This document shows positions 42,068-53,726 of a stretch of 64,000 nucleotides of DNA, in pieces (the stretch's first letter is position 1; each line of letters begins with the position of its first letter). Origin of the DNA: Macrostomum lignano. Taxonomy: Eukaryota. Under the pieces are notes generated by a model. The model ran no database searches. It was not told the DNA's origin and worked only from the letters and a program-made list of their open reading frames with translations. The position numbers and the translations under genes are program-made. The stretch is from the NCBI GenBank assembly GCA_002269645.1, contig NIVC01000249.1:124001-188000 (forward strand). Reading direction: 5' to 3'.

Positions 42068-53726
<11,659 letters not shown>

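What the first reader, a model, noticed from the sequence alone, without database searches (positions are those of the whole stretch)
50212..50226. ClC channel with the gating glutamate replaced by leucine (GKEGP to GMLGP)
Seen: the exon reads [24 protein letters not shown], which aligns with ClC-2 GSGIPEMKTIL..SGMPLGKEGPFVH. The central Ser (GSGIP), the GxFMP motif and the central Tyr (FYD) are intact, and the proton-glutamate site is hydrophobic (FSIEL). Established: this Glu is the fast gate and H+ coupling residue of CLCs, and vertebrate ClC-K channels are the known natural exception (Val). Inference: an independently evolved, ungated, voltage- and H+-uncoupled chloride conductance in an invertebrate. 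Two adjacent codons differ (ATG CTG), which argues against a single-base error.
Basis: partly seen in the sequence, partly recalled or inferred. Interest (0 to 1): 0.75.

Follow-up and report, generated by a model that had tools for sequence, protein, structure and literature searches.

The report
Flatworm chloride channel lacking gating glutamate
A flatworm (Macrostomum lignano) gene for a CLC chloride channel really does carry leucine where nearly all CLCs have the "gating" glutamate, but the whole protein is unusually divergent, and similar natural replacements also exist in vertebrate ClC-K, nematode CLH-4 and red algae, so it is a moderately interesting new variant rather than a unique oddity.

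Summary
On the minus strand, 50226..50212 reads GGG ATG CTG GGC CCC (GMLGP). HMMER aligns it without gaps to GKEGP of ClC-2 and ClC-1.

I built a 13-exon, 852-codon gene model (52427..42068, minus strand). Every junction is GT-AG and there is no internal stop. Exon GC3 is 79% against 41% GC in the introns. Pfam matches the complete Voltage_CLC domain. The organism is the flatworm Macrostomum lignano.

The protein belongs to the metazoan ClC-0/1/2/K channel branch:
- Its best PDB scores are to ClC-1 and ClC-2.
- It separates from the exchangers with 100% bootstrap.
- It shares three introns at identical position and phase with ClC-Kb, C. elegans clh-4, and sponge and scorpion ClC-2-like genes.
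- It groups with ClC-K in 1% of bootstraps and with CLH-4 in 0%, so the Glu loss looks independent.

Two qualifications apply:
- The protein is a very long branch. It differs at 35 of 119 positions that are at least 90% conserved in metazoan channel CLCs, where other members differ at 0-13. The gate change is one of many.
- ClC-K is not the only natural exception. Nematode CLH-4 has a conserved Met (GKMGP), and a red-algal clade has Leu.

No expression data or second-assembly confirmation could be obtained. "Ungated" is an over-reading, because ClC-K still gates without the Glu.

The parts
50212..50226 (-). Gate motif GMLGP (G152 M153 L154 G155 P156). The Leu codon CTG is at 50218-50220 and the Met codon ATG at 50221-50223.
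   Evidence: Translation. Gap-free HMMER alignment to GKEGP of ClC-2 and ClC-1. Multiple alignment.
52382..52427 (-). Putative coding exon 1 ([18 protein letters not shown] at 52425-52427, phase-1 GTAAAT donor). This is the least certain exon.
   Evidence: The phase matches what exon 2 requires. There is no homology support.
50922..51044 (-). Exon 2, helix B (…[19 protein letters not shown]…).
   Evidence: GT-AG junction, phase 1.
50672..50827 (-). Exon 3, helices B-C. It ends …CSPIAA-G, with the Gly codon split in phase 1.
   Evidence: The intron position and phase are shared with ClC-Kb, clh-4, sponge and scorpion genes.
50149..50354 (-). Exon 4, the gate exon: GSGIPE (Ser-cen) through GMLGPNVH to …HRLQRQ.
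   Evidence: tblastn.
49538..49742 (-). Exon 5: …AAAVGVAC197[15 protein letters not shown]212… It carries the slow-gate Cys equivalent and Leu at the proton-Glu site (FSIEL = 49638-49652).
47613..47841 (-). Exon 6 (helices I-J).
47069..47324 (-). Exon 7 (helix K region and a poly-Ala loop).
46087..46413 (-). Exon 8 (helices M-Q). GVFMP is at 46267-46281.
   Evidence: It matches UniRef fragments P0001 and P0002.
45636..45757 (-). Exon 9 (helix R). The central Tyr535 codon is at 45701-45703 (PFYD).
45269..45446 (-). Exon 10 (start of CBS1).
   Evidence: The HMMER alignment to ClC-1 extends to residue 608.
44728..44796 (-). Exon 11 (rest of CBS1, by position).
   Evidence: Supported only by splice-phase logic.
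44311..44649 (-). Exon 12 (inter-CBS linker).
   Evidence: The donor choice is uncertain.
42068..42370 (-). Exon 13 (CBS2-like segment, TGA stop at 42068-42070).
   Evidence: Pfam does not detect CBS.

Best explanation
This is an intact but strongly derived Macrostomum lignano gene of the metazoan ClC-0/1/2/K (plasma-membrane channel) branch of the CLC family. During its divergence the gating glutamate at the N-terminus of helix F was replaced by leucine, and the preceding lysine by methionine. The proton-glutamate site is also hydrophobic (Leu), as in all CLC channels.

Shown here: the gene structure, the residue identities, the family placement, and independence from ClC-K and CLH-4.

Inferred: without a carboxylate that can swing into the external or central anion site, the protopore cannot be closed or protonated in the canonical way. 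The protein cannot be a Cl-/H+ exchanger. The homodimer most likely conducts Cl- with high open probability and weak dependence on voltage and external pH, functionally like ClC-K. Residual gating, through the common gate, the retained slow-gate cysteine, the CBS domains or a partner subunit, remains possible.

The two-step codon path GAG to CTG must pass through Val (GTG) or Gln (CAG). From my own knowledge of the mutagenesis literature, both give conducting, open-gate channels. This fits a gradual, tolerated change.
For: - The gate residue is real and correctly aligned.
- The model has 13 exons and 852 codons, GT-AG at every junction with consistent phases, and no internal stop.
- Exon GC3 is 79% against 41% GC in the introns.
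- Pfam Voltage_CLC scores 178.6 bits and covers profile positions 2-343 of 346.
- PDB phmmer ranking is ClC-1 163 bits, ClC-2 159, CmCLC 146, ClC-K 129, ClC-3 115, ClC-6 104, ClC-7 98.
- In NJ with 200 bootstraps the exchangers separate at 100%, metazoa plus Mlig get 54.5%, Mlig+ClC-K 1% and Mlig+CLH-4 0%.
- Three introns are shared at identical alignment column and phase with ClC-Kb, clh-4, sponge or scorpion genes. Two more lie within 1-3 columns at the same phase.
- The Cl-binding motifs GSGIP, GVFMP and the central Tyr are retained. Many replacements at conserved sites are conservative (K>R, F>Y, T>S, E>D).
- The established effects of neutralising the gating Glu, and of Val in ClC-K, are summarised in PMC4188032.
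Against: - There is no functional, expression or second-assembly evidence. No protein in a collection of about 15 billion sequences contains this gate exon: the best hit is 46-55% identical, and exact look-ups found nothing.
- Public M. lignano gene models (P0001, P0002) cover only the C-terminal half.
- The protein differs at 35 of 119 near-invariant positions, and Pfam does not recognise its CBS domains. Extrapolating from ClC-0/1/2/K mutagenesis is therefore risky.
- Leu is bulkier than Val or Ala, and the neighbouring Lys is lost. Conduction could be reduced or selectivity altered.
- Attachment to the metazoan clade has only about 55% bootstrap support on a long branch.
- The 5' exon and the last two junctions of my model are unverified.
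Confidence: 0.55

Rival explanations
1. The gene is a redundant duplicate under relaxed constraint in the duplicated M. lignano genome. It is a decaying or recently dead gene, and losing the gate residue is just one of many degenerative changes.
For: - It differs at 35 of 119 near-invariant columns, against 0-13 for other metazoan channel CLCs, and mean identity is 32% against 47-55%.
- Pfam does not detect its CBS domains.
- The N-terminal half is absent from all predicted-protein collections searched.
- At least two near-identical copies exist (P0001 and P0002).
Against: - An 852-codon frame across 12 introns, with every GT-AG site and phase intact and no stop, is not expected after neutral divergence of this size.
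- Strong codon bias is retained, with GC3 at 79%.
- The anion-coordinating motifs and helix pattern are preserved, and many substitutions are conservative.
- A very recent death cannot be excluded.
Confidence: 0.2
2. The protein is functional but is not an open Cl- channel. The Leu side chain and the loss of the vestibule Lys could make the protopore poorly conducting. The protein would then act as a modulatory partner in heterodimers with a canonical CLC, or have altered anion selectivity or an intracellular role.
For: - CLCs are dimers that can heterodimerise (stated in PMC7834019).
- The Lys is 97% conserved in metazoan channel CLCs and is Met here. F157N follows the gate directly.
- From my own memory of Nehrke et al. 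2000, which I could not retrieve, nematode CLH-4b gave no current when expressed alone. ClC-K needs barttin.
Against: - The Lys position varies widely among eukaryotic CLCs (W, S, Q, T, R, M and others in the census), so it is not essential.
- Ser-cen, Tyr-cen and GxFxP are intact.
- Neutral gate substitutions in studied CLCs give conduction (PMC4188032).
Confidence: 0.2
3. The Leu and Met codons are an assembly or sequencing artefact.
For: Only one assembly was available. The exon sits between tandem-repeat-filled introns.
Against: - Three or more base substitutions in two adjacent codons, with the frame preserved.
- The exon itself is unique sequence.
- The rest of the exon is similarly divergent, so the motif is not an isolated anomaly.
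Confidence: 0.03

Closest known systems
Vertebrate ClC-K (ClC-Ka/Kb, ClC-K1/K2; structures 5TQQ and 11AH)
   Same: It is in the same channel branch and has a hydrophobic residue in place of the gating Glu and a non-Glu proton site. GSGIP, GxFxP and the Tyr are retained. The expected consequence is a high-open-probability, weakly voltage-dependent Cl- conductance.
   Different: - Leu rather than Val, and the preceding Lys is also lost (GMLGP against GKVGP).
- It is not an orthologue: ClC-K monophyly is 100% and Mlig+ClC-K 1%.
- The loop before GSGIP is ClC-1/2-like (PIAAGSGIP) rather than the ClC-K type (PSSGGSGIP).
- It keeps the slow-gate Cys that mammalian ClC-K lacks.
- It is far more divergent overall.
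- Any barttin-like dependence is unknown.
Nematode CLH-4 (C. elegans T06F4.2 and orthologues)
   Same: It is an invertebrate channel-branch CLC that naturally has a hydrophobic residue (Met, GKMGP) at the gating-Glu column. That residue is conserved in 15 clusters across Caenorhabditis, Aphelenchus and Rhabditophanes. Like the flatworm gene, clh-4 lacks the phase-0 intron right after the gate residue.
   Different: - Met rather than Leu, and the Lys is retained.
- It nests inside the nematode CLCs (nematode monophyly 99.5%; Mlig+CLH-4 0%).
- It is otherwise very conservative, differing at 0-4 near-invariant columns against 35 for the flatworm protein.
ClC-2 / ClC-1 / ClC-0 and invertebrate ClC-2-like channels (Drosophila ClC-a, CLH-3)
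   Same: These give the best HMMER scores. They share intron positions, the slow-gate Cys, a hydrophobic proton site and the overall architecture with a C-terminal CBS region.
   Different: All of them have GKEGP. The flatworm protein is only about 32% identical, has a very short predicted N-terminus, and has lineage-specific loop insertions and deletions.
Red-algal 'Leu-gate' CLC clade (Pyropia GAB0492266.1, Hildenbrandia, Rhodosorus; P0059 carries GMLGP)
   Same: It has Leu at the gate column and Leu at the proton-Glu site. One member has the identical pentapeptide GMLGP.
   Different: It is an unrelated lineage (Mlig + algal clade 0%). These proteins also replace the central Tyr with Phe (DLFS). 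P0059, the only member whose contig I fetched, is encoded by a single uninterrupted ORF.

Membership tests
CLC family (Pfam Voltage_CLC, PF00654) | Full-length match to the Voltage_CLC profile above the gathering score | tested here: met
   178.6 bits against a cut-off of 24.8. Residues 93-524 cover profile positions 2-343 of 346.
CLC family (Pfam Voltage_CLC, PF00654) | Anion-coordinating motifs GSGIP (Ser-cen), GxFxP and the central Tyr | tested here: met
   GSGIP at residue 109, GVFMP at 452 and Y535 in PFYD.
CLC family (Pfam Voltage_CLC, PF00654) | Gating glutamate in G(K/R)EGP | tested here: not met
   GMLGP, with Leu154 in the Glu column. This is the subject of the finding. ClC-K and CLH-4 also fail this feature and are accepted family members.
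CLC family (Pfam Voltage_CLC, PF00654) | Eukaryotic C-terminal pair of CBS domains | tested here: inconclusive
   Pfam finds no CBS hit at E <= 1. The HMMER alignment to ClC-1 does run into CBS1, to residue 608. The last exon resembles CBS2 only by eye.
Metazoan ClC-0/1/2/K channel branch | Non-glutamate residue at the proton-glutamate site (FSIE-V type rather than FSLE-E) | tested here: met
   FSIEL, with Leu212. The exchanger outgroups all read FSLEE.
Metazoan ClC-0/1/2/K channel branch | Phylogenetic placement with channel-type rather than exchanger-type CLCs | tested here: met
   The exchangers are separated in 100% of bootstraps. Attachment to the metazoan channel clade gets only 54.5-57% on a long branch. 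The PDB score ranking puts ClC-1 and ClC-2 first.
Metazoan ClC-0/1/2/K channel branch | Shared gene structure (intron positions and phases) | tested here: met
   Introns 108:ph1 and 556:ph2 are shared with all four compared genes. Intron 516:ph0 is shared with clh-4 and the scorpion gene. Introns 245:ph1 and 177:ph0 lie within 1-3 columns of introns of the same phase.
ClC-K subfamily | Orthology (nesting in the ClC-K clade) and Val at the gate | tested here: not met
   ClC-K is monophyletic in 100% of bootstraps and Mlig+ClC-K appears in 1%. The gate residue is Leu, not Val. The loop before GSGIP is not the ClC-K type.
ClC-K subfamily | Dependence on the barttin beta-subunit; renal or inner-ear epithelial expression | not testable with these tools
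   No expression or interaction data were available.
CLC Cl-/H+ exchangers (ClC-3 to ClC-7, EcClC) | Both the gating and the proton glutamates are present | tested here: not met
   Both are Leu (L154 and L212).

The most novel reading that the evidence does not exclude
The flatworm gene would be a third, independent metazoan lineage, after vertebrate ClC-K (Val) and nematode CLH-4 (Met), in which a ClC-2-type channel lost its gating glutamate to a hydrophobic residue. This would point to recurrent, convergent evolution of constitutively open epithelial or excretory Cl- conductances. The flatworm version has gone furthest: it has also lost the vestibule Lys and remodelled about 30% of otherwise invariant positions while staying functional.
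Probability: 0.4. Interest if true: 0.6.

Novelty: new variant of a known kind. Interest (0 to 1): 0.45.

Why it matters
The gating glutamate is the central mechanistic residue of the CLC family. It is the fast gate in channels and the H+/Cl- coupling element in exchangers. Natural proteins that do without it show which other parts of the protein must change, or need not change.

If this flatworm protein conducts, it would give:
- A Leu-gate channel on a background very different from ClC-K.
- A test of whether residual gating in Glu-less CLCs depends on the retained slow-gate cysteine or the common gate.
- Together with nematode CLH-4 (Met), evidence that ClC-K-like leak Cl- channels evolved repeatedly in animals, possibly in excretory epithelia.

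M. lignano and C. elegans are both genetically tractable, so the question can be tested directly. If the gene turns out to be silent or non-conducting, the finding reduces to a divergent duplicate in a duplicated genome.

Tried and rejected
- I used the 69-aa gate exon instead. For the same reason I could not run structure prediction on the full model, so no structural test of a substitute acidic residue was possible.
- **No close orthologue or transcript-derived protein.** The word-index search with concatenated exons found only two C-terminal M. lignano fragments. The exhaustive search found nothing above about 55% identity. Exact look-ups of the mechanical ORF MLGPNVH…, of P0002 and of the annelid protein P0182 found nothing.
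- **No flatworm homologues recovered.** None appeared in any search, so I could not test whether the Leu is shared within Platyhelminthes or Macrostomum.
- **Alternative or mutually exclusive canonical gate exon: rejected.** No second G..GP.[VILM][HQ] or GSG[IVL]P peptide occurs in any frame of the window, and tblastn finds a single copy.
- **Orthology to ClC-K, CLH-4 or the red-algal Leu clade: rejected** by bootstraps of 1%, 0% and 0%.
- **Horizontal origin from a protist:** not supported, given 12 introns, several at metazoan-conserved positions.
- **Literature.** No open paper discusses Glu-less invertebrate CLCs or the CLH-4 Met. The two older C. elegans CLC papers are not held.
- **One protein-database search was left unused.** No seed sequence was available that would have targeted flatworms.

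Full report
**1. The observation**

The finding's coordinates lie on the minus strand of the window. The reverse complement of 50212-50226 is GGG ATG CTG GGC CCC, which translates to GMLGP.

I searched a 170-aa concatenation of three neighbouring exons against all PDB sequences. It hit ClC-2 (E = 6.6e-26), ClC-1 (1.5e-24), ClC-3, CmCLC, ClC-7 and ClC-K. In the printed alignments, '[13 protein letters not shown]' sits against 'sgmplgkegpfvh' (ClC-2) and 'sgipvgkegpfvh' (ClC-1) with no gap. Pfam assigns the pieces to Voltage_CLC. The Leu is therefore in the gating-glutamate column and the Met is in the column of the preceding Lys. Getting from AAG GAG to ATG CTG needs at least three substitutions.

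**2. The gene**

The nearest database proteins, at 96-98% identity, are two UniRef fragments from Macrostomum lignano: A0A1I8I3X9 (P0001) and A0A1I8IAU5 (P0002). They cover only the C-terminal half of the membrane domain. This identifies the organism as that flatworm. tblastn with all retrieved homologues shows a single CLC gene in the window, on the minus strand.

Reading the three frames exon by exon, I assembled a 13-exon model:

- Exons: 52427-52382, 51044-50922, 50827-50672, 50354-50149 (gate exon), 49742-49538, 47841-47613, 47324-47069, 46413-46087, 45757-45636, 45446-45269, 44796-44728, 44649-44311 and 42370-42068.
- All twelve introns are GT-AG with mutually consistent phases.
- The CDS is 2559 nt (852 codons plus a TGA stop) with no internal stop.

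Further support comes from several measures:

- Exon GC3 is 79%, against 41% GC in the introns and 47% for the whole window.
- The full model matches Pfam Voltage_CLC over profile positions 2-343 of 346, at 178.6 bits.
- It aligns to ClC-1 through helix R into CBS1. The junction I inferred after the gate exon (…HRLQRQ|[10 protein letters not shown]…) fits that alignment.

The weak points of the model are the first coding exon (MPPRL…, chosen because its phase-1 GTAAAT donor fits exon 2) and the last two junctions. Pfam does not recognise the CBS domains.

No other gate-like or GSGIP-like peptide exists in any frame of the window. An alternative canonical exon is therefore excluded within these 64 kb.

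**3. The kind of CLC**

With the full model, PDB bit scores rank as follows: ClC-1 163, ClC-2 159, CmCLC 146, ClC-K 129, ClC-3 115, ClC-6 104, ClC-7 98, AtCLCa 92. The proton-glutamate position is Leu (FSIEL), as in channels (FSIEV) and unlike exchangers (FSLEE).

I collected named metazoan relatives with a profile search. I then built a neighbour-joining tree on 488 trimmed columns. Bootstrap frequencies are from the 200-replicate run:

| Grouping | Bootstrap support |
|---|---|
| Exchanger outgroups separate | 100% |
| Metazoan channel CLCs without the flatworm protein | 95% |
| Flatworm protein joins that clade at its base | 54.5% (57% in the first run) |
| ClC-K monophyletic | 100% |
| Nematode CLCs monophyletic | 99.5% |
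| Flatworm + ClC-K | 1% |
| Flatworm + CLH-4 | 0% |
| Flatworm + red-algal Leu clade | 0% |

The flatworm protein sits on a very long branch, so this placement is fragile. I therefore looked at gene structure as an independent line of evidence. I mapped exact intron positions and phases for four genes and projected them onto the alignment. The genes were Pan CLCNKB, C. elegans clh-4, a sponge ClC-2-like gene and a scorpion ClC-2-like gene.

- The phase-1 intron in the Gly codon just before SGIPE is shared by all five genes at the identical column and phase.
- The phase-2 intron after helix R is also shared by all five.
- A phase-0 intron before helix R is shared with clh-4 and the scorpion gene.
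- Two more flatworm introns lie 1-3 columns from introns of the same phase in the other genes.

This is good evidence that the gene descends vertically from the metazoan ClC-0/1/2/K-type gene.

**4. How unusual the gate is**

An exhaustive phmmer search of 1.84 billion representative proteins with the gate exon found no close relative. The best hits were 46-55% identical. Among the 150 best hits plus the earlier ones, the aligned pentapeptide was distributed as follows:

| Pentapeptide | Count |
|---|---|
| GKEGP | 90 |
| GKVGP | 18 |
| GRLGP | 6 |
| GKLGP | 4 |
| GMLGP (P0059) | 1 |
| GRVGP, GVQGP, GSQGP, GVMGP and others | remainder |

The Leu-gate sequences form their own clade. It contains red algae: Pyropia vietnamensis, Hildenbrandia rubra and Rhodosorus marinus. 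This clade also has Leu at the proton site and Phe instead of the central Tyr. It is unrelated to the flatworm gene.

More relevant is the named metazoan set. C. elegans CLH-4 (T06F4.2) and its orthologues form 15 clusters from Caenorhabditis species, Aphelenchus and Rhabditophanes. All read …GVPIGKMGPFVH…, with Met in the gate column. Related nematode CLCs (Loa, Ascaris, Anisakis, Syphacia, CLH-3) keep GKEGP.

I found no discussion of this in the open literature I could search. The two original C. elegans CLC papers are not held. Vertebrate ClC-K is thus the best-known natural exception, but not the only one.

**5. How divergent the protein is**

Among 40 metazoan channel-type CLCs, 119 aligned columns are at least 90% conserved. 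The number of these columns at which each protein differs is shown below.

| Protein | Differing columns |
|---|---|
| Flatworm protein | 35 of 119 |
| ClC-K, CLH-4, CLH-3, Drosophila ClC-a, annelid, sponge, ctenophore | 0-5 |
| Two next most divergent sequences | 11-13 |

Mean identity to the set is 32%, against 47-55% among the other members.

- The changes include K153M (next to the gate), F157N, V212L, G121N, R220N, H494G and Q508D.
- Many changes are conservative (K>R, F>Y, Y>F, T>S, E>D, L>M).
- The anion-binding motifs, the slow-gate cysteine equivalent (…GVAC197TF…) and the helix pattern are retained.
- The loop before GSGIP (PIAAGSGIP) is of the ClC-1/2 type rather than the ClC-K type (PSSGGSGIP).

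The gate replacement is therefore part of a wholesale remodelling, not a single switch on a ClC-2 background.

By inference, keeping an 852-codon frame and twelve correct splice sites through this much divergence argues for purifying selection on the product. It cannot exclude a recent loss of function.

**6. Mechanism**

Established knowledge, as summarised in PMC4188032:

- Neutralising it permits passive anion permeation.
- In ClC-K it is Val, yet ClC-K still shows protopore and common gating.

My inference for this protein has four parts:

- With Leu at both the gating and proton sites it cannot be an exchanger.
- It lacks the titratable carboxylate gate.
- It most likely forms a Cl- pore with high open probability and weak voltage and external-pH dependence.
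- Some residual regulation is possible through the common gate (the cysteine is retained), the C-terminal domain or a partner.

'Ungated' is too strong a word for this. The bulkier Leu and the missing vestibule Lys could also reduce conductance or change selectivity.

**7. What is missing**

- No read-level confirmation and no second assembly.
- No transcript evidence and no flatworm orthologues.
- No functional data.

**8. Verdict**

The gene is an intact, highly derived flatworm member of the CLC channel branch that lost the gating glutamate independently of ClC-K and of nematode CLH-4. This makes it a new variant of a known kind: a naturally Glu-less CLC channel. Interest is moderate (0.45).

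The genuinely useful by-products are two. The replacement recurs across animals, as Val in vertebrates, Met in nematodes and Leu in this flatworm. And two tractable invertebrates offer a way to test what such channels do.

Noticed in passing
L004 (C. elegans chromosome X, clh-4 / T06F4.2); proteins P0186-P0195, P0208, P0209, P0211, P0214, P0217, P0249: Nematode CLH-4 orthologues all carry GKMGP, with Met in the gating-glutamate column. This holds in 15 clusters covering Caenorhabditis species, Aphelenchus and Rhabditophanes. The Ascaris, Loa, Syphacia and Anisakis sequences that group as sister to them, and the separate CLH-3 group, keep GKEGP. I found no mention of this in the searchable open literature.
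   Followed up: partly
Proteins P0041, P0049, P0059, P0067, P0082, P0085, P0121, P0127, P0144, P0156, P0159; locus L001: The seven members long enough for the tree (P0059, P0067, P0082, P0121, P0127, P0156, P0159) form a distinct eukaryotic CLC clade; the identified members are red algae (Pyropia, Hildenbrandia, Rhodosorus). Those seven have Leu at the gate (G[R/K/M]LGP) and Leu at the proton-Glu site, and all but P0059 have Phe in place of the central Tyr (P0059 keeps Tyr). The four short fragments (P0041, P0049, P0085, P0144) are listed only for their Leu gate. A chytrid CLC (P0133) has GSQGP and P0080 has GSAAP.
   Followed up: partly
window 42406-50647 (introns of the CLC gene): At least eight of the 12 introns (3-10 and 12) are dominated by their own tandem array. 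Examples are (ATAG)x420 at 47846-49524, a 17-mer x60 at 42406-43425, 15-mers at 44106-44313, 44885-45241 and 50416-50647, (TAAC)x37 at 45469-45617 and a 16-mer at 45846-46053. Mechanical ORF lists read through them as long fake 'proteins' such as SIYL repeats.
   Followed up: partly
window 45242-46413 compared with UniRef A0A1I8I3X9 and A0A1I8IAU5 (P0001, P0002): The public M. lignano gene models for this locus are truncated fragments of 186-187 aa. Each starts inside exon 8, and each has a read-through or frame error at its 3' end. The N-terminal half, including the gate, appears in no predicted protein set searched.
   Followed up: partly
L003, L005, L006 compared with window 50149-50354: In Pan CLCNKB and in the sponge and scorpion ClC-2-like genes, a phase-0 intron falls immediately after the gate residue (GK[E/V]|GP). 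This intron is absent from both the flatworm gene and C. elegans clh-4.
   Followed up: no
window 1487-3832, 18966-19394 and 24130-26514 (minus strand): Long stop-free stretches carry multiple cadherin domains, including a FAT4-like N-terminal cadherin domain. They probably belong to one very large FAT-like protocadherin gene that occupies much of the first 28 kb.
   Followed up: no
window 38473-39537 (minus strand): A single 355-aa stop-free stretch gives a strong Actin-family match (Pfam Actin 290 bits, profile positions 45-406 of 410). This is an actin or actin-like gene just downstream of the CLC gene. Its 5' part must lie in another exon.
   Followed up: no
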